This document shows, piece by piece, positions 10,828-23,900 of a DNA stretch of 32,420 nt. The notes beneath the pieces were generated by a model. That model worked only from the letters and a program-made list of their open reading frames with translations, was not told the origin of the DNA and did no database searches. The stretch's first letter is position 1, and every line of letters begins with the position of its first letter. Both the position numbers and the translations under genes were made by a program. This stretch comes from Fonticula alba ATCC 38817 (lineage: Eukaryota > Protista > Nucleariida). Where the stretch lies: assembly GCA_000388065.2 (NCBI GenBank), contig KB932201.1; one strand, 5' to 3'.

Positions 10828-11438
10828 GGTGCCGATAGCGTGGTGGCAAGGTGTATGCGTGCGTGTGTGCGTGCGTGTGTGTGTGGGGGGGGGGACGTAC
10901 ACATGGTGGGGAAAGGGAGGAAGGGGGAAAAGATTGAGAGAGAGCAGGACAGGGATGCCGATTCGGTGTCTGTCCAGCGGGCTGTTTGATGGCCACCTCT
11001 TCTGGGCATTTCACATTTGCCCGGGCGCCCCTGGTCCGCCCCGTCCAGTCCAGCGGACGGGGAGGGGGGGGGGGGGGGTGCGGATCTCCCGTCGCGTCCG
11101 GCCAAGTGCGCCTCCAGAGCCGCGGGAACACGGAACGCGGCTGGGGTGGAATACAGCGGGACAGTGATCGGGGTCAGCATTGGCAGATGCCAACGCGCGG
11201 TGTCCCGAGCATGTTTGAGCCCACCCCCGGCCCTGGGGCCCCGGCACCTCGGAGCAAGGCGGCGGCGGCGGCGGCCGCCGTAGAAGGGCATCCGTCGTGA
11301 TGGGTGCCGGCACACATCTGGGGACATCTCGCGCCACGTCCTCCCCTTCTCCCCCCTGCCTCTGCTGCTTCGTCCCCCCTCCCCCGCCCCTCCCCCGCCC
11401 CTCGCCCCTCCCCACTTTCCTCTGGCCGGCATCAATAG

Positions 11439-11910
11439 CCATCGAGGGCCGCACTCAGTTCGACATGCTGCAGGTGATCCAGCGCGAGTACAAGCTCCGG
11501 TCATACTCGCTGAACTCCGTGTCCATCGAGTTCCTGGGCGAGCAGAAGGAGGATGTCCATCACTCGATCATCTCGGACTTGCAGAACGGCAACTCCGAAA
11601 CCCGCCGGCGCCTGGCCGTCTACTGTCTCAAGGATTCGGACCTGCCCATGCGGCTGATGGAGAAGCTGATGTGTGTCTTCAACTTCGTGGAGATGGCCCG
11701 TGTGACCGGCGTCCCGTTCACATACCTGCTCACGCGTGGCCAGCAGATCAAGGTCGTGTCGCAGCTCTTCCGCAAGTCCCTCGAGCGGGACTTCCTCATC
11801 CCCACTCTGCGTGTGGGTGGCAGCGGCGCCGACGAGCAGTACGAGGGTGCCACCGTCATCGAGCCGGAGCGCGGGTACTACTCGAAGCCGATTGCGACGT
11901 TGGATTTCTC
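11439..11910 (+). pseudogene. POLD1: Single isolated internal exon of DNA polymerase delta catalytic subunit (end of exonuclease domain to start of polymerase motif A); gene fragment or misplaced assembly piece
   Basis: [109 protein letters not shown] is unmistakable Pol delta. Intact acceptor (TAG 11436-11438) and donor (GTGCGC 11911). No other Pol delta exon is visible on either side. Identity confidence is high; status is uncertain. Confidence 0.85.
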
Positions 11911-15757: not shown

Positions 15758-17628
15758 ATGGGCGACGGCAATCCTTCGCCCCGGGACACCCATCCCGGGG
15801 GCGGTTTTCGCCACCACCACCATCACTCCCAGCAGCAGCCGAGGCAGCAGCAGCAGCCGCCGCAGCAGCAGCAGCAGCATTCCTCGCACTCGCAGCAGCC
15901 AGCCCTGTCGTCTCATGCCCCACAGCACCCTCCATTCCCTCCGCACCAAGGCAGCCACCACTGGTCGTACTCCTCGGGCCATCATCCGCCCCAGTATCCG
16001 CAGCACCCTCCCCACTTCCACCACCCCCACCACCAGCAGCAGCAGCCGCCCCCGCCGTCCTTCCCGCGCCACCATCATCATCATCATCAACATCTCCATC
16101 ATCGGCAACAGCCCTACCGCCCTCACCAGCAGCCTCCCCGCGGCCGGGCACCTGCCAATCAGAACACCCGGGAAAAGCGCCTGGTACGCTCTCACCCTGG
16201 GCTTTGAGCATTGCTGACCGGCCCAGGGCGCCGCCTTGCGCCATGGGCTTGCCCCCCNNNNNNNNNNNNNNNNNNNNNNNNNNNNNNNNNNNNNNNNNNC
16301 CCCCCCCCTGCCCCTGCCCTTGCCCCGGGACTGACGTCGCGCCCTGTCATCCGCCACCACCGGCCTAGAGCGAGCACATTCCCCAGCTCCCTGACCTGAA
16401 GAGCATCCCCGACGAGCTGTGGCAATTCTTCCGCGAGCGCCTGGCCCTCGTTCGGTACCCGGACCCGGGGCTGATTGTGGCGCACCTGCGGCGATTGATG
16501 CCGGCCACGGCCGGCGAGCCTGGCACGCCGGAGCTCCTGCGGTCCGTTCTGTCGGATGGCATCCAGCGCCAGGACCCGGAGGTCGTGGACCCGGCCCGGC
16601 CGGACCCGGATTCCGGGGCCCCCTTCAACAATCCCTGCGGGGCTCGGTACCAGCTGGTTCTGAGTGACAGCGACTGGCGGGTTCTCTTTGCCGAGTACTC
16701 GGACGCGCAAATCCTCTTCTGCCTGGTGCGGCTCTTTTTGGATGGCCATCGTTTTGGCCGGCCGGTCGGCGACGATGGCCAGACCGAAGACGGCTGGTCC
16801 CGGGCCGCGCCGGCCATCAACCCCGACACCGGCGCCCGGGTGGAGCTCCACTCCCCGGCGGATGATGAGCTCGTGCGCCTGACCTTCCCCTACAAGCACC
16901 TGTCCTATTCGGCCGGCGATTGCGCGCAGCTCTTCACCAATCTGTCGCGCTTCTACCTGGTACGCCCTCGGCATTTGGCGGCTCGCTGTCCTCCGGCCCG
17001 GGACCCGGCCCCGACTGACCGTGTCTCGTGCCCCCTGGTCGGGCATGCCTCGGTGGCCCTCCCGCCTCCCTGCCCTGCTCAGAGCCCGTCCACCTTCAAG
17101 CATCCCAAGGGCCATCGTGCCCCCCGGTGGGACGTCCGGTACCGGAGCGACGCCATGTGTGTCGTCTATATGCCGATGCCCAGCTTCAAAGACGGCCCGC
17201 AGGACCGATGCTTCTATGTGATCGGCGACAGCCACTACCATGTGATTGATATCCTGCCAGACCTGTTCACGGAGCCCGTGCGCCTGCGGGCGTCACGTCG
17301 CAAGTTTGGCTCCACAGCCGCTGTCACCAGCTCCCACTGCCCGAACGAGTCGCGCGAGGCTCTGGATGGCGAGATTTTCTCCCCCTCCGTGCACGCCACC
17401 TGGTACGGCGTGGCCGACGAGTCGAACCAGGCCGCTGACCCGACCGGCCGGTCGCGCTCACATGTCACGGCCGCACTCTACAGGTGTGTACTCTGGCTTC
17501 CCTGCCTCTCTCTTTCTCCCTGATCTGTCTCTCCATCTTTGTGTCTCTCTTTTCTGCTCCTTCCTCAAGGTCCTGACTGACAGTTGGCTTTGTCTTTGGT
17601 TTGGCCTCTTTCTCTCTTTCTCTCTTTC

Positions 17629-17748: not shown

Positions 17749-19318
17749 CCCCTCTCCCCCTCTNNNNNNNNNNNNNNNNNNNNNNNNNNNNNNNNNNNNN
17801 NNNNNNNNNNNNNNNNNNNNNNNNNNNNNNNNNNNNNNNNNNNNNNNNNNNNNNNNNNNNNNNNNNNNNNNNNNNNNNNNNNNNNNNNNNNNNNNNNNNN
17901 NNNNNNNNNNNNNNNNNNNNNNNNNNNNNNNNNNNNNNNNNNNNNNNNNNNNNNNNNNNNNNNNNNNNNNNNNNNNNNNNNNNNNNNNNNNNNNNNNNNN
18001 NNNNNNNNNNNNNNNNNNNNNNNNNNNNNNNNNNNNNNNNNNCTCTCCTTTTCTGACACAGTCCCCCGGCTTGGCCGATCGCAGGTCTCGATCGCCGTTC
18101 AGTTCTACAAGCAATTCAAGGCCACGCGCATTCTGGACATCTCGGCTGGCTGGGGCGACCGCATGATCGCCGCGCTGGCGTGCGCGCCGACCGTGCGCAC
18201 TTACGTCGCATGCGATCCCAACCGCACGCTGATCGAAGGGCACTCGCTCATTCGGCAATCCTTCTCCCGGTATCTGGAGGAAAAGCCCCCCCAGGACCAG
18301 GAGCCTGGGCAGTTTGCCCCACATGCCGCGGACTTCCGTGTGGTGTATGGCCCCTTCGAGTCGTCGGACCTGAAGCTGGCCCCGGGGCAGCGCTTCGACT
18401 TGGCCTTCAGCTCGCCGCCCTACTTCAACTTCGAGAAGTACACCTTCGACCAGACGCAATCCTGGGTGAAGCACGGGTCCAGCTCGGACTCGTGGCTTGT
18501 TCGCTTCCTGCTCCGGTCGTATTCCCGCTGCTGGTCGCTGCTTGAGGTGCGAGGCGCATGGCTCCCCGTGTGCGGGATGCTCTTTCCGGGGGGAGGGGGG
18601 GGGGGGGTCGCGCTGCTGCTTGGCCGACTCTTTTTTTCTTTCTTTCCCGGCCCCCCTCGTTCATCTCCTCCTGGCTCCTCCTCCCTCTCCCCCCCCCCTC
18701 TCTCTCTCTCTCTCTCTCCGTCCAGCTGTCCCCCTTCTCTTTTCCTTTTGCGCACTGCCTCTTCCCCTCCCCCTCCCAGGTCCTGACTCCTTCTCCCCCC
18801 TCCCCCCGGTGCGCAGGATGGCGGCCACTTGGCCATCTACATCCAAGATGTGTCCGATGAGCCGATCTGCGAGCCGATGTCGATGTTCGTGCTGGCGCAC
18901 CTGCCCAACTCCTCGGCCCGCGGAGTGTACAGCATCCTCGGCGGGGTGGGGAAGTCGCGCCCGGTGTGGGTGTGGCAGAAGCAGGCCCCCGGAACAAGCC
19001 CCTTCGCGGCCGAGGGCCGGCTCCAGTTCCCGACCGGGTCCTTTGCCCCGGTGAAGCCCGGCGATCTGTCCATTCCCTTTGTGCCCTGGTCCAGCGGCGC
19101 CGAGCCCACCTTCGACGAGCGGGTGTCGCGACTTCTGTCCTTGGCAGATCGCCGACGCATCGACGACGAGTTCGATGTGCACTACCCCATCGCTCGGCGA
19201 CTGCTCTTCCTCGGTGGATCTGACGCCACCGACACCACGGTCCCACCGCCGGATGTGGTGGCCTTCAGTGGCCGGACCCAGGCCATGCATCTGTCCGAGG
19301 GGTGGTTCGATGGGGGCT
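15758..19318 (+). CDS. His/Gln-rich N-terminus plus SPPY-type amino (N4-cytosine/N6-adenine) methyltransferase domain; exons 15758..16183, 16369..16959, 17083..17483, [exon predicted in N gap], 18085..18546, 18817..19318 (or stop at 19326 if unspliced)
   Basis: Motif I RILDISAGWGDRMIAA (18127-18174), motif II YVACDPN, catalytic motif IV FDLAFSSPPYFNFEKY (SPPY at 18412-18423), and LLE|DGGHLAIYI across a phase-0 intron (18547-18816). Upstream FPYKHL and IDILPDLFTEPVRLRA blocks match my recollection of this MTase family. Confidence 0.88.
17605..17763. repeat. Degenerate (CT)n/(CTTT) microsatellite in an intron, next to an assembly gap
   Basis: Direct reading. Confidence 0.95.
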
Positions 19319-19464
19319 GTGCGTGACGCACGCGCTCTCCGCTCTCGTGTGCTCTCTTCTTTCTTTCCCCTTTTTTTTTCCGCCCCCGTCCCGCACTTGT
19401 TCCAGCCCCGGCCCAGGCCAGGCCGGGGGGCGGACACTTTCTAACCATAGCGAGCACGCTCGCC

Positions 19465-19510
19465 TTCCTTCTTCTTCTTCTTCTTCCTCTTCCTCTTCCT
19501 CTTCTTCTTT
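19465..19510. repeat. (CTT)n/(CCTCTT)n pyrimidine tract, the candidate polypyrimidine tract of the intron joining the MTase and GNAT domains
   Basis: Direct reading; ends about 10 nt before the CAG at 19520-19522. Confidence 0.85.
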
Positions 19511-19522
19511 TTGGGTCGACAG

Positions 19523-20845
19523 TCGACATTGCCCCCCTGCACGAGGCATCGGCCGAGTTGCGTGCCGATGCGGCCATCCTCTTCCAGCAGGCCGGGCTAC
19601 GGGCTGCCGAGCTCAGCGAAAACTATCCCGTGGCCTCGGTCCGGGCCAACCTCGGCAGTGAGGCCTTCCGGGCGTTGGAGGACCCGCCGCAAATGCAGGA
19701 CCTCTTCCCGGCGGCCTCCGGCGATTCGAAGACCTCGAGAAGCTCGGCCGATGCGCATGACCCGGCTGTGGACTTTGTGTGTGACTACCTGCGCGCTGGC
19801 CAGGCGGCCATTGTGGCCGGCCAGCCGGGCCCCGGCGGCGAGGACCCGGCCGATGGCCGGTGGTGGGTGGCCACGGCCCGGTCGACCGGCTTCGCGGTGG
19901 GTCTTCTCCGAGCTCGGCGCGTGCCTGCCGCCGGTGCGGCCGGCGCCCCTGCGGCCGATGTCCCGGGCAATGAGGCTCCGGCCGAAATGTGGCTGGTCAG
20001 TGACTTTGCCGTGGCCCGTGCCTGGGACACGGACTACGCCGCCATCAGCTACGCCCTGCTCCGGGAGTTTGTCCGGTCGGTGGCTCCAGCCGACGGGACG
20101 GCCGGTGCCTGGCCGCTGGTGCGCTTCCGCTTCTGGCCGTGGATGCGCATCCGTGGCGCGCCGGACTCGGAGCTTTCCGAGCCCCAGCACTATCAGAGCC
20201 CCAATGCTTTGGTAGAGGCACAGCGTAAGTTCAGCACGCTGCTCCTGGAGTGCATGGCTCCGGGGGCCTCTTCCGAGGGGTTCGATGCGGGGCTGCTCAG
20301 CCGTATGGTGCGTGGGGCTGCGCCTCTGCCTTTCCCCCCTTGCCGCCTGGCGCTCGTCTGTCGTCAACTGCCGCCTCCCCCCCCCCCCCCATTCGCCGCG
20401 CATTTCGCTCTCCTCTCTCTCTCCCCTCGGAGCCTCCCACTGCCTTTTTTTTGTCTTCGCTGACACCCCTCGATGCCGGTCGCGCGATGTGGGCGCCTGC
20501 TCAGTGTGACTCGGTCCTGGAGCACGCCAAGGCCCTGTGGACGACAAGCCGCGGCCGGTCCTCGGGCTTGGACATCAAGTTCCCGGCGCGCCGGGGCGCC
20601 GTGGCCGCCAAGCGCACCATGCGTTTCAGGTGAGCATTCTGTGCCTGGAAGGCTCCCCCCCCCCTCCCCCCCCTCCTGCCTCCGCCTGGGCGGGGCTCCT
20701 GTTGTTTGTGTGCTCCCCCGGCCCCCTGCCATTCGCGGTCTGTCCTTCCCCCTGCTTCTGTCTTTTACTTCTCCTCTTTGCCCCTTTCTCCCGGCTGGCT
20801 CGCTGGGCCGGCAGCTGTTTGTGGCTTCATGCGCGCGAGCTGTGA
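19523..20845 (+). CDS. GNAT-like acetyltransferase domain; exons 19523..20307, 20505..20629, 20815..20845; probably the C-terminal part of the preceding MTase gene
   Basis: DIAPLHEASAELRADAAILF (beta1-alpha1-like), WWVATARSTGFAVGLLRAR (beta2-beta3), MWLVSDFAVARAWDTDYAAISYALLREFV (motif A-like beta4-alpha3) and terminal SCLWLHAREL*. Phase-consistent introns GTGCGT 20308..20504 and GTGAGC 20630..20814. No in-frame ATG precedes the first 55 or so codons. Confidence 0.62.
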
Positions 20846-20993
20846 GAAAGAATATAGATTTGGTTTTGCCCCACTTGGCCGGGGCTTGTGTGGCCGAATG
20901 CACACCCATGCGGACACCGGGCGGGTGAGTGCCTCCCAGGGGGCTCCCTCCTTGGGCTGGGCGGCGAGGGCCACGGGCCGGGTGGGTGGTCAC

Positions 20994-23900
20994 CTACTCG
21001 CGCTTCAGCACGAGGGCCGTTCGGGAGGGGATATACACCTGGATGCGAGCCGCACGACCATCCCAGCCGCCCTCGGCCTCGCGATCCGAGAAGTACCGCC
21101 CATTCGGGTCGATCAGGGAGTCGGCCCGGCAGGTGGCACACTCTCGTCCCGAGGCCACCTCCAGCAGCTGCTTGGTCAGGAAGGCCGTGGCGGCCGGCTC
21201 GCCACCGGCCCGGGTGTGCTCCTTGCTGGCACAGCCGGCCCGGGCCAGCTGGAAGCACAGCGCGTGGAAGCGATTGACGCACGACCCGGGAGTCGGAATG
21301 TCGGCGGCCGAGTCGTCGCCACGGTCCGACTGGGTGGCGGCCACCAGCTGCGAATGGGACAGCTGCGGTGCGGAGCATGAGCGGCGGTAGCACTCGGTGT
21401 CGCGGTCGGAAAAGATCGGCGCCTCCGAGGACAGCACCATGCGGTAGGTCCCGGCCGCGGGGACACCGATGCTGTATCCCTCGAAGCTCTTGTACGGGTG
21501 GAAGTTGGCCACCACCACGTAATGGTCGTAGGCCGGCGGGGCGTCGGCCAGGGTGGCGTCCAGCCGGACATTCGGATTTGCCGGGGCCGGGAAGCTGAAA
21601 TCGAAGGCCAACACCTGGTCGCCATCGTTCTTGCGGCTGACGAACTGTCAGGGGAACAGCCCGTGGACGGGACCGTCCATGAGGGGGACCCGTGGCCAAG
21701 GTCGGGGGAGGGGGGGGAGGGTCACACAGGGTTCCGAGTCAGGAGCGGCGAATGGGGGGCATGGCGGGCGGGCGGGCGGGCGGGCGGGCGGGCGGGTGGG
21801 TGGCCGAAAGCCCGCGAGACACGGTGTACCTCGCGCGTGGTCCGGGGCACCACCCGGCCCAGGCCCCAGATGAGGCCCGCATCAAAGCGCCAGAGGGCTC
21901 CAAAGTGCAGGTTTGGATCGTCGAGCAGTTGGAACTGCCGCCGCGCGTGGTTGTATGAACTGAGGCAGCAGGGGGCGGCCGACGCGGGCGGCCGGTCGAT
22001 CAATGCCGGCGAGCGACGAGCGAGGCCACATCGAGAACGGGAAAGGCCCGCGGGCCCGGGCGGGAGACACGGCGGGCAGGGGTTAGAATACCGGGGGGAG
22101 AGAGAGAGAGAGAAAAAGGCCGGCCCACAAGCATGCTGGAAGGCGAGCATGGGAGGCGCACTTTCCATTGCCCTCGCGCGGGAAGTCCAGCCACTCGGGA
22201 TGGCCAAACTCATTGCCGATGAAGTTCAGATAGCCCTCGCCGCCGAGGGTCAGGGTCACGAGGCTGTCGGGGACCGGGGGGAGGAAGCAGAGGCAGCGGG
22301 AGGCGTCCCGGAGCCCGGGGGGGGAATGCATCAAGGGCGGCACAGGCCCAGAGGGAGGGTCAGCAAGCGGGAGCAAGGCCCTCGGGCCAATGGGCCCGAA
22401 GCCAGGCCAGATGCCCGGCGCAGACGGGCCAACGCACCGAATCATCTTGTGCAGGCGGAGGGCGCGCTCGACGGCGCCCTTGTCCGGCCCGGGCGGGCTC
22501 AGACGCGACATGGCCGAGTACATGCTGGCGCCGGCCATGCGGAACATGAGGGCCTGGTCGCCGACGAGGCATTGATCGTGCGACTCCACATAGACCACGG
22601 TATTTTCCTGGCGCGCACGGGCCGGCATGGGGGGGGGGGGGGGGGGGGGACAGACGGACCGCGAGTCAGGGCATGGGGGCCGGTAAAGCGGCAGCCGTGG
22701 GGCCTTCCCATCGGCCGGCCGGCCGGCCGGCGGGTGGGCCATCGATCGGCGTCGCGTACCATGTGCCGGCGGTTGGACAGCATCCAGCTGATATTGCTGA
22801 CGGACCAGTCCTCGTCCCTGATCTCCTTGGCCAGGCGGGTCCACTCGTCGGCCGGGAACATGGCCATGCGCCAGCCGAAGCCCATGCCGGCCTCGGCCAG
22901 CGGCCGGGCCAGCAGCGGCATGCCGGACACATCTTCGGCCACGGTGATGGCCCCGGGGTGGGTATCCGCCACCAGGGCATTGGCCAGCGTCAGGTAGGCG
23001 ATGGCGTCTCGGTCGGTGGTGATGGGGTCGAAGTATTCGCGGTAGTCGCCGGAAAAGACGTGGAAAATGCCATGGTGGGTGTACAGCTGTCGCCGCGGCC
23101 GGTCAGCATATTGCACCGGGTGGCCGAGTGTCGCAAGCCCCGCCCAGTGCGCCGTACCATGGAGGTGATCCCGTCAAAGCGGAACCCATCGACCCCGTAG
23201 CAATCGAGCCAGAAGCGCAGGTTGCTCAGGAGGTAGCGGGCCACCTGCGGGCGCTCATAGGCAAAGATCCGGCTGGCGTCCATCCGACGCGGGTCAGTCG
23301 AGGAGGTGCGACCGGGGGGGGGAGGGGGGGGGGGGCGGGGAGCACGAGCCCGGCCTCCGGGCCCGGGAGCCAAATGATCAAGAGACACACCTATCCCACT
23401 GGGAGTGCGTGCCGCGCGGGCCGCCATGGAAGTAAGTCCCGTCCGGGGTTCCGTCAAACTCCCCAAGGCCATCGAGCACTGCGCCCGGCCGAGGGGGGGA
23501 GGGGGGGGGGGGGGGCATGCCCACGAGGGCGGTCAGTGGCTGGGGCCGACATGGGGGGCTCGAGGACGAGGCGACGCTGGTGTACCATTGCTGCAGCCAT
23601 GTGCCTGGACAATGTCCAAGATGACCCGGAGGCCGAACTGGTGGCACTTGTCCACGAGCGCGCGGAACTCACACGGCGTGCCGCTGTAGCCGGACACGGC
23701 GAACGGGTGGGTGACATGGTACCCGAAGGAGGCGTAATACGGGTGGTGCTGGACGGCCATCACTTGGATGGCATTGTAGCTGTGGCGACAAGGGTTAGCT
23801 TTGGTGGTGCGGGGGAGCCGGCCACCGGCCGGGGCGGGACTCTGATGGAGGGGCGCGCGCGGGGGCGGGTGGCCCTTTCCCCGCCGCCGGGCATATGTTG

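What the first reader, a model, noticed from the sequence alone, without database searches (positions are those of the whole stretch)
19300..19560. The MTase appears fused in frame to a GNAT acetyltransferase domain through an intron the ORF track hides
Seen: the MTase frame seems to stop at 19326, but 19319 begins GTGCGT, the commonest donor in this window. Splicing to the CAG at 19520-19522 (after a long CTT tract, with CTAAC at 19441) is phase 1/phase 1 and gives ..EGWFDGG-F-DIAPLHEASAELRADAAILF... An alternative acceptor at 19449-19450 is also in frame. The GNAT-like frame has no ATG of its own before its first strand and helix. Inference: one protein of over 1000 aa with a His/Gln IDR, an amino-MTase and a GNAT. 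I do not recognise this architecture. It could be a dual writer (base methylation plus acetylation of histone, protein or nucleic acid) or a two-step base hypermodification enzyme.
Basis: partly seen in the sequence, partly recalled or inferred. Interest (0 to 1): 0.9.

Follow-up and report, generated by a model that had tools for sequence, protein, structure and literature searches.

The report
Spliced virus-type methyltransferase gene with orphan tail
The predicted intron is real and joins a giant-virus-type DNA methyltransferase to a 300-residue tail in one Fonticula alba protein, but public annotation already has this fusion and the tail is not shown to be an acetyltransferase.

Summary
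Observation confirmed. Assembled transcripts from three RNA runs (two samples) join 19318 directly to 19523. This removes a 204-nt GT..AG phase-1 intron, and no transcript covers the intron.

The fusion is not new. The public gene model for Fonticula alba H696_00159 (XP_009492269.1, 1099 aa, "hypothetical protein") already contains the junction.

- The frame ends at 20633 after a further intron (20308-20504), not at 20845.
- A coding exon is hidden in the assembly gap 17764-18042. The public model wrongly skips it.

The methyltransferase is real. It belongs to a ~400-aa family (SAGWGDR and SPPYF motifs) that is abundant in giant-virus and phage metagenome contigs.

The C-terminal ~300 aa have no detectable relative in 1.84 billion representative proteins and match no family model. 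One low-confidence AlphaFold model (pLDDT 37) resembles GNAT acetyltransferases in four structure libraries. A second construct does not. I found no match to the acetyl-CoA loop signature by hand. The GNAT fold is therefore a plausible lead (about 50%), and an active dual writer is unlikely (about 15%).

The scan had already noted the methyltransferase exon on this same window (s1-065444).

The parts
15758..16183 (+). Exon 1 of the public model: start codon and His/Gln/Pro-rich disordered N-terminus (P0001 residues 1-142)
   Evidence: tblastn of P0001 on the window. ATG at 15758 and donor CTG|GTACGC at 16184 were read. The stretch 15758-17483 is held by the same four RNA runs at 0.57-0.67 of sampled words. 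The junction itself was not checked with reads.
16369..17487 (+). Exon(s) for residues ~143-473. The public model also removes 16960-17082. The last ~180 residues form the N-terminal domain of the viral methyltransferase family (FPYK motif). The 3' end of this exon is uncertain.
   Evidence: P0001 mapping. Family homologs align colinearly with P0001 from ~295 to ~700. The frame shows a GC3 signal. The public donor at 17487/17488 is contradicted by the transcripts.
17764..18042 (.). Assembly gap (279 N) that must hide at least one coding exon of this gene
   Evidence: Three contigs carry 134-255+ letters upstream of 18083. The last 30 of these letters are not found anywhere in the window. In frame they translate to TSRLECNQFK. 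This fits the family consensus E-A/C-x-x-F-K immediately before motif I.
18085..18546 (+). Methyltransferase exon: motif I (ILDISAGWGDR), DPN, and motif IV (SPPYF) near 18412-18426
   Evidence: Transcript contigs in four runs. Translation. 299 homologs down to E 1.4e-45.
18547..18816 (+). Intron (270 nt, GTGCGA..CAG)
   Evidence: Joint 18544->18815 (cut +2) in all four runs.
18817..19318 (+). Exon with the rest of the methyltransferase core (GGHLAIYIQD, ICEPM, RPVWVWQK) and a ~110-residue linker with no homologs
   Evidence: Family homologs end at about P0001 residue 683-700.
19319..19522 (+). The intron in question: 204 nt, phase 1, GTGCGT donor, CTAAC at 19441, CTT tract 19468-19509, CAG acceptor
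   Evidence: Contigs X1 rec2, X2 rec4 and X4 rec16 join 19318 to 19523 with zero depth inside. Sequence. TRF. The junction is present in public protein P0001.
19523..20307 (+). Exon for the C-terminal orphan alpha/beta domain (P0001 796-1057), the putative GNAT-like module
   Evidence: In-frame GC3 is 0.8-0.9. phmmer against 1.84e9 representatives finds only the protein itself.
20308..20504 (+).
   Evidence: Joint 20306->20504 (cut +1) in all four runs.
20505..20633 (+). Last coding exon (basic tail ...KRTMRFR) and stop at 20631-20633. The 3' UTR continues to at least 20667.

Best explanation
This is one ordinary spliced, expressed Fonticula alba gene (H696_00159). A U2-type GT-AG phase-1 intron (19319-19522) joins the exon that ends the methyltransferase region to the exon that encodes the C-terminal domain. 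This is shown.

The protein core (residues ~295-700) belongs to a ~400-aa family of [S]PPY amino-methyltransferases. The family is found mainly on giant-virus and phage metagenome contigs and has motif I before motif IV. The core keeps every invariant residue of the family. I infer that it is catalytically active, that it methylates an exocyclic amine of DNA (adenine N6 or cytosine N4), and that the gene came from a virus and has since acquired introns and host-like GC content.

The His/Gln-rich N-terminus and the ~400 C-terminal residues are lineage-specific additions. The C-terminal ~300 residues probably fold as an alpha/beta domain. Its topology may be GNAT-like (about even odds), but I found no match to the acetyl-CoA pyrophosphate-loop signature.

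I therefore think it most likely acts as an accessory module for targeting, regulation or substrate binding. This would resemble the pseudo-GNAT domains beside methyltransferases in polyketide loading modules, rather than a second catalytic writer.
For: Splicing and fusion:
- Contigs from three of the four runs (two samples) show the exact junction, with no intron coverage.
- The frame is continuous across three introns.
- The public 1099-aa model has the same junction.

Methyltransferase:
- 299 homologs, E down to 1.4e-45.
- They are colinear with P0001 ~295-700.
- All 18 invariant columns are kept.
- 21 of 38 family members hit PF01555.
- The best solved relative is a T. thermophilus putative modification methylase, E 8e-5.

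Viral distribution:
- At least 544 relatives in IMG/VR, with the best hits in giant-virus MAGs.
- Genomic contexts include protein kinases on one contig, and SNF2, DnaB and tandem paralogs on another.

Orphan C-terminus:
- It matches only itself in 1.84e9 representatives.
- There are no metagenome, viral or phage relatives.

GNAT lead:
- Model 1 finds GNATs in PDB, Swiss-Prot AFDB and the ESM Atlas, and in an aligner-independent wide search.
- 28 of the 100 nearest ESM-feature clusters carry Acetyltransf_1.
Against: - The methyltransferase substrate is not shown. Two homologs are named by their source as tRNA or rRNA methylases. P0001 itself gets no Pfam hit at E<=0.01.
- Viral origin is inferred from distribution, not from a rooted tree.
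- For the tail, every structural statement rests on models with pLDDT 37 and 44.
- Best Z is only 5.3 and Foldseek E is >=0.13, below what the tool notes call meaningful.
- The shorter construct gives unrelated hits.
- My placement of the beta4-alpha3 loop is a hand alignment, so the missing acetyl-CoA signature is not proven absent.
Confidence: 0.6

Rival explanations
1. Dual writer. The C-terminal domain is a very divergent but active GNAT acetyltransferase. One polypeptide would then both methylate and acetylate, acting on DNA/RNA bases, chromatin proteins, or one base in two steps.
For: Model 1 resembles GNATs across four libraries and two aligners. About 35 of the top 50 chains in the unbiased search of 48,161 chains are acetyl- or acyl-transferases by title. 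ESM-feature neighbours include Acetyltransf_1 clusters. The secondary-structure order is compatible with a GNAT core.
Against: No GNAT model of Pfam or NCBIfam matches, even at E<=10. hhalign against a (shallow) RimI profile finds nothing. Model confidence is very low, and the second construct is not GNAT-like. The loop after the presumed strand 4 (RAWDTDYA) has acidic residues where the glycines of Q/R-x-x-G-x-G/A should be. There are no homologs, so conservation of any pocket cannot be tested.
Confidence: 0.15
2. The tail is not GNAT-related at all. It would be a lineage-specific alpha/beta or partly disordered extension, Ala-rich as expected in a 67% GC genome. The GNAT resemblance of one model would be an artefact of single-sequence prediction.
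For: There is no sequence relative and no family match. The composition is 19% Ala. pLDDT is 37-44. The 872-1080 construct gives helical-hairpin and miscellaneous hits only. Z around 5 is within the background quoted by the tool.
Against: A random poor model should not return about 35 of 50 GNAT-type chains from 48,161 representatives. It should also not recover the same fold in three other libraries. Model 2 serves as a control and shows what unspecific output looks like. The ESM-feature neighbours, computed from the sequence without that model, point the same way.
Confidence: 0.45
3. Two separate genes: the methyltransferase mRNA ends after the 19324 stop, and the downstream ORF has its own promoter.
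For: None found. The only basis is the bacterial-style ORF list.
Against: Spliced contigs cross the junction in three runs. There is no coverage in the intron, and no contig starts or ends there. The downstream frame has no ATG before its first structural elements.
Confidence: 0.01

Closest known systems
Giant-virus/phage ~400-aa SAGWGDR...SPPYF methyltransferase family (uncharacterised; partly PF01555 N6_N4_Mtase)
   Same: It is colinear over ~400 residues at 25-43% identity and shares all invariant residues: motif I, DPN, SPPYF-x-x-E-x-Y, QS, and W..FL.
   Different: The viral members are stand-alone and end ~140 residues after SPPY. The Fonticula protein has introns, a 290-residue N-terminal extension with a His/Gln tract, and a 400-residue C-terminal extension. 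None of these additions is found in any relative.
Bdelloid rotifer N4CMT (PMC8885841, PMC10406627; PDB 8s9n is a weak hit of the family profile)
   Same: It is a eukaryotic, expressed amino-methyltransferase of non-eukaryotic type that has been fused to an extra domain.
   Different: N4CMT is of bacterial origin and is fused to a chromodomain, and its 4mC activity is demonstrated. Here the source looks viral, the added domain is an orphan, and no activity is known. Sequence similarity between the two is marginal (E 0.04).
GNAT superfamily acetyltransferases (Hat1, RimI, AAC(3), TacT/AtaT, Gna1)
   Same: The secondary-structure order and the rough topology of one AlphaFold model agree. 80-125 residues align at 3-5 A.
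   Different: There is no HMM match. The Q/R-x-x-G-x-G/A loop is not recognisable. Z is at most 5.3. The resemblance is not reproduced with a second construct.
AprA MT2-GNAT didomain of the apratoxin loading module (PDB 6d6y, rank 15)
   Same: A methyltransferase is covalently followed by a GNAT-fold module. From my own knowledge, the GNAT-like parts of such loading modules can be non-acetylating.
   Different: AprA is a bacterial polyketide C-methyltransferase that acts on acyl-ACP. It is unrelated in sequence to this [S]PPY amino-methyltransferase. The match is Z 4.3 over 79 residues.
T. thermophilus putative modification methylase (PDB 2zie/2zif/2zig)
   Same: It is the best solved sequence relative of the family profile (E 8e-5) over motif IV to about motif VI.
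   Different: In 2zie the SAM-binding motif I lies after motif IV. In this family it lies before. The two are therefore circularly permuted relative to each other (alignment).

Membership tests
Spliceosomal GT-AG intron | GT donor and AG acceptor at the exact boundaries | tested here: met
   GTGCGT at 19319 and CAG ending at 19522. The other two confirmed introns use GTGCGA/GTGCGT..CAG.
Spliceosomal GT-AG intron | Absent from mature RNA, with exons joined precisely | tested here: met
   Three contigs join 19318 to 19523 with 0 mismatches. Depth is zero inside the intron in four runs.
Spliceosomal GT-AG intron | Branch-point-like element and pyrimidine tract upstream of the acceptor | tested here: met
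   CTAAC at 19441-19445 and a CTT tract at 19468-19509. Actual branch-site use was not tested.
[D/N/S]PP[Y/F] amino-methyltransferases (N6-adenine / N4-cytosine type, PF01555 and relatives) | SAM-binding motif I (glycine-rich loop after a beta strand) | tested here: met
   ILDISAGWGDR. The columns L, D, S, A, G, G and R are invariant in 38 family members.
[D/N/S]PP[Y/F] amino-methyltransferases (N6-adenine / N4-cytosine type, PF01555 and relatives) | Catalytic motif IV | tested here: met
   FSSPPYF. S, P and P are invariant and Y is nearly so.
[D/N/S]PP[Y/F] amino-methyltransferases (N6-adenine / N4-cytosine type, PF01555 and relatives) | Significant match to the curated family model PF01555 | tested here: not met
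   P0001 290-720 has no Pfam family at E<=0.01. 21 of its 38 relatives do, with a best E of 1.6e-9. Membership is therefore by transitive homology only, and the motif order is permuted relative to 2zie.
[D/N/S]PP[Y/F] amino-methyltransferases (N6-adenine / N4-cytosine type, PF01555 and relatives) | Methyl transfer to an exocyclic amine of DNA | not testable with these tools
   This needs an enzyme assay, or 6mA/4mC mapping in Fonticula DNA.
GNAT acetyltransferase superfamily | Match to a GNAT sequence model | tested here: not met
   Pfam and NCBIfam give no hit at E<=10. PDB phmmer gives none. hhalign against a RimI profile gives probability 0.2%, though that profile is shallow.
GNAT acetyltransferase superfamily | GNAT fold (mixed sheet with splayed strands 4 and 5, helices alpha1-alpha4) | tested here: inconclusive
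   Model 1 (pLDDT 36.7) matches mainly GNATs, with Z up to 5.3 and TM by target up to 0.52. Model 2 (pLDDT 43.6) does not.
GNAT acetyltransferase superfamily | Pyrophosphate-binding loop Q/R-x-x-G-x-G/A between strand 4 and helix 3 | tested here: not met
   After the presumed strand 4 (MWLVSDFAVA) the loop reads RAWDTDYA. No register gives the two small residues. This is my own hand alignment of the sequence to the secondary structure, so it is tentative.
GNAT acetyltransferase superfamily | Acetyl-CoA binding and acyl transfer | not testable with these tools
   This needs biochemistry.

The most novel reading that the evidence does not exclude
A bifunctional writer unique to the Fonticula lineage. 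It would be a giant-virus-derived DNA amino-methyltransferase covalently fused to an extremely divergent but active GNAT. One enzyme would then deposit a methyl mark on DNA and an acetyl mark on a nearby protein or nucleic-acid substrate.
Probability: 0.15. Interest if true: 0.7.

Novelty: new variant of a known kind. Interest (0 to 1): 0.38.

Why it matters
Methylation of eukaryotic DNA on exocyclic amines (6mA, 4mC) is contested. The clearest case, bdelloid N4CMT, is an acquired prokaryotic enzyme fused to a chromatin domain.

Here a close relative of fungi expresses an intron-bearing methyltransferase of giant-virus type. All family-invariant residues are intact, and the protein carries two lineage-specific extensions. 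That makes it a concrete candidate for a second, independent domestication. It can be tested by mapping 6mA/4mC in Fonticula DNA and by assaying the recombinant protein.

The specific point raised, the intron that fuses the two parts, is ordinary gene structure and is already in RefSeq. The practical gain on that point is a correction of the model at the assembly gap and a clear statement that the GNAT label is unproven.

Tried and rejected
- Pfam, NCBIfam and PHROG scans of each exon translation. Nothing for the tail. The methyltransferase exon gives only weak hits.
- PDB sequence search with the tail and with the methyltransferase exon: nothing.
- Word-index search with the 154-aa methyltransferase exon alone: nothing, because of the length window. 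It succeeded once the spliced piece of P0001 was used.
- Viral-contig scan with the single exon: nothing.
- Metagenome and viral scans with the tail. The only hit was a chance match, L004, with no GNAT-like ORF there.
- Phage tblastn with the tail: no match.
- I fetched E. coli rimI and spent the last homolog search on it to build a GNAT profile. The 120 rows listed were all >=80% identical, so the profile is shallow and its negative hhalign result means little.
- Test for an internal repeat, or a relation between the tail and the rest of the protein: none.
- Test of whether the ~260-aa C-terminal extension of four giant-virus homologs is the same domain as the Fonticula tail: it is not (hhalign probability 0.1%).
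- I looked at the DNA polymerase delta exon at ~11400-11900 to ask whether the region is an integrated virus. It reads like an ordinary eukaryotic Pol delta, and the other neighbour is an alpha-amylase-family gene. I see no sign of a viral island.
Full report
**1. The observation**

The window is 67% G+C eukaryotic draft sequence with five N gaps.
- In the frame whose codons start at positions equal to 1 modulo 3, an open stretch runs from 18787 to 19323 and stops with TGA at 19324-19326. The same frame is open again from 19327 to 20460.
  - GTGCGT at 19319
  - CTAAC at 19441-19445
  - a CTT tract at 19468-19509
  - CAG at 19520-19522
  - a second in-frame AG at 19449-19450
- In-frame G+C at third codon positions is 0.8-0.9 on both sides and collapses between 19320 and 19520.

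**2. RNA evidence**

Four small runs of the source organism (two samples, kept as assembled contigs) hold 58-64% of the sampled words of 18043-20900. I laid them on 18043-21600.
- Three contigs (X1 record 2, X2 record 4, X4 record 16) run from 18815-19318 straight on to 19523 and beyond. Their record coordinates are consecutive and there are no mismatches.
- Depth is zero in 19352-19470 in every run.
- Two more introns are removed in all four runs: 18547-18816 and 20308-20504.
- The spliced sequence reads through in one frame. It passes the methyltransferase motifs and ...EGWFDGG-F-DIAPLHEASAEL..., and ends at a stop at 20631-20633.

So the predicted junction is exactly right. The predicted end of the protein (20845) is not. 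The alternative acceptor at 19450 is unused.

**3. The fusion is already annotated**

I ran a full HMMER scan of the 260-aa exon product against 1.84 billion representative proteins. It found one true match, a 1099-aa protein with 100% identity over residues 797-1056. That protein is Fonticula alba H696_00159, XP_009492269.1, UniProt A0A058ZF55, named "hypothetical protein". Its sequence contains the junction. The second hit (P0002) is a repeat protein that matches a short DGRW segment. I regard it as chance.

**4. An error in the public model**

- Three contigs carry 134 to more than 255 letters upstream of 18083. The last 30 of these letters occur nowhere in the window.
- In frame they encode TSRLECNQFK. 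In the family alignment the position just before motif I reads E-A/C-x-x-F-K.
- The public model instead joins ...ALYRC directly to VSIAV... across the 279-N gap at 17764-18042.
- At least one conserved coding exon therefore lies in that gap.
- The upstream exons are held by the same RNA runs. They are also tied to the downstream exons by colinear homology: relatives align with P0001 from about 295 to 700.
- I could not show physical linkage with reads.

**5. The methyltransferase**

- The spliced piece 474-796 has 299 relatives with E down to 1.4e-45, mostly 360-430 aa long.
- In a 38-sequence alignment the Fonticula protein keeps all 18 invariant residues. These include the LD.SAG.G.R of motif I, DP, and SPP.F..E of motif IV.
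- 21 of the 38 members hit PF01555. The Fonticula protein itself does not.
- The family profile's best solved relative is a T. thermophilus putative modification methylase, E 8e-5. That alignment shows motif I after motif IV in the solved enzyme and before it here, so the two are circularly permuted.
- The family is abundant on viral contigs, with at least 544 tblastn relatives. The best hits are on giant-virus MAGs.
- Two genomic contexts were examined. One is a 190-kb contig with protein kinase genes. The other is a 36-kb marine contig with at least five tandem paralogs beside SNF2 and DnaB genes.
- From this I infer a DNA amino-methyltransferase of viral origin. The substrate and the direction of transfer are inferences, not results.

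**6. The C-terminal domain**

Relatives of the family end about 140 residues after SPPY. The Fonticula protein continues for 500.

Sequence searches with the tail all came back empty:
- no relatives in the 1.84-billion-protein library
- none in JGI metagenomes, IMG/VR or phage genomes
- no Pfam, NCBIfam, PHROG or PDB sequence match

Structure prediction gave mixed results.
- A single-sequence AlphaFold model of 790-1099 is poor (pLDDT 36.7). Its elements come in the order helices, three strands, helix, (strand), helix.
- Foldseek against the PDB gave no significant hit (best E 0.13). Yet, by their titles, practically all of the top 50 are GNAT acetyltransferases or M. tuberculosis ICL2, which has been crystallised with acetyl-CoA.
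- The same preference appears in Swiss-Prot AlphaFold models and in ESM Atlas clusters, where TM by target reaches 0.52 over 117 residues.
- It appears again in a Foldseek-independent comparison with 48,161 representative chains. About 35 of the top 50 there are acetyl- or acyl-transferases, but the best Z is only 5.3.
- ESM-feature neighbours include 28 of 100 clusters with Acetyltransf_1.

Against the GNAT reading:
- A second model of 872-1080 (pLDDT 43.6) contains the whole region that aligned to GNATs. It gives only miscellaneous or helical-hairpin matches.
- If the strand MWLVSDFAVA is strand 4, the following loop is RAWDTDYA. This does not fit the Q/R-x-x-G-x-G/A pyrophosphate loop. That is my own reading.

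I put the GNAT fold at about even odds and an active acetyltransferase at about 15%.

**7. Other architectures in the family**

Four viral members, three of them from giant-virus MAGs, carry a different conserved ~260-aa C-terminal extension.
- It has an RDD.L.GGTKQR motif and a weak resemblance to PLP-dependent ACC deaminase/D-cysteine desulfhydrase.
- It is not detectably related to the Fonticula tail.
- C-terminal additions to this methyltransferase have therefore arisen more than once, but the Fonticula one is unique.

**8. Verdict**

- The GNAT half is a lead that my tools could neither confirm nor exclude.
- The earlier scan note s1-065444, on this same window, pointed me to the methyltransferase exon. 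I verified it independently.

Noticed in passing
window 17764-18042 (N gap) and 17484-17490: The public gene model joins ...ALYRC to VSIAV... across the gap. The transcripts instead carry other sequence there, whose last 30 nt encode TSRLECNQFK, the family's conserved segment before motif I. So at least one coding exon is missing from the assembly, and XP_009492269.1 is wrong at this point.
   Followed up: partly
L006:3377-5386, L017:1-1881, L047:2565-5297, L081:2-2149: Four viral homologs, three from giant-virus MAGs, fuse the same methyltransferase to a conserved ~260-aa domain (RDD.L.GGTKQR ... VQVGK ... YDAKLW ... WNVG). The domain weakly resembles PLP-dependent ACC deaminase/D-cysteine desulfhydrase (Pfam PALP E~0.1; PDB 9jqf E 0.07). 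It is unrelated to the Fonticula tail.
   Followed up: partly
L001:5561-17224: A 36-kb marine metagenome contig carries at least five tandem ~400-aa paralogs of this methyltransferase family, interleaved with SNF2-type helicase and DnaB genes.
   Followed up: no
window 20308-20504 and 20631-20667: A third intron (197 nt, GTGCGT..CAG) and the true stop at 20631-20633.
   Followed up: yes
window 20843-21614 (minus strand): A convergent neighbour with an Alpha-amylase_C domain (Pfam E 1.3e-13). Its transcript contigs start at 20843-20846 in all four runs, about 176 nt from the last laid base of the methyltransferase transcript.
   Followed up: partly
window 16960-17082: The public model removes a 123-nt stretch here (GTACGC..CAG). 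It is a multiple of three and has no stop, so it could be an intron or be retained. I did not check it with reads.
   Followed up: no
window ~11400-11900 (plus strand): The exon flagged elsewhere as an orphan DNA polymerase delta exon reads like ordinary eukaryotic Pol delta (YCLKD exonuclease motif up to ...IATLDFS). I saw nothing viral about it.
   Followed up: no
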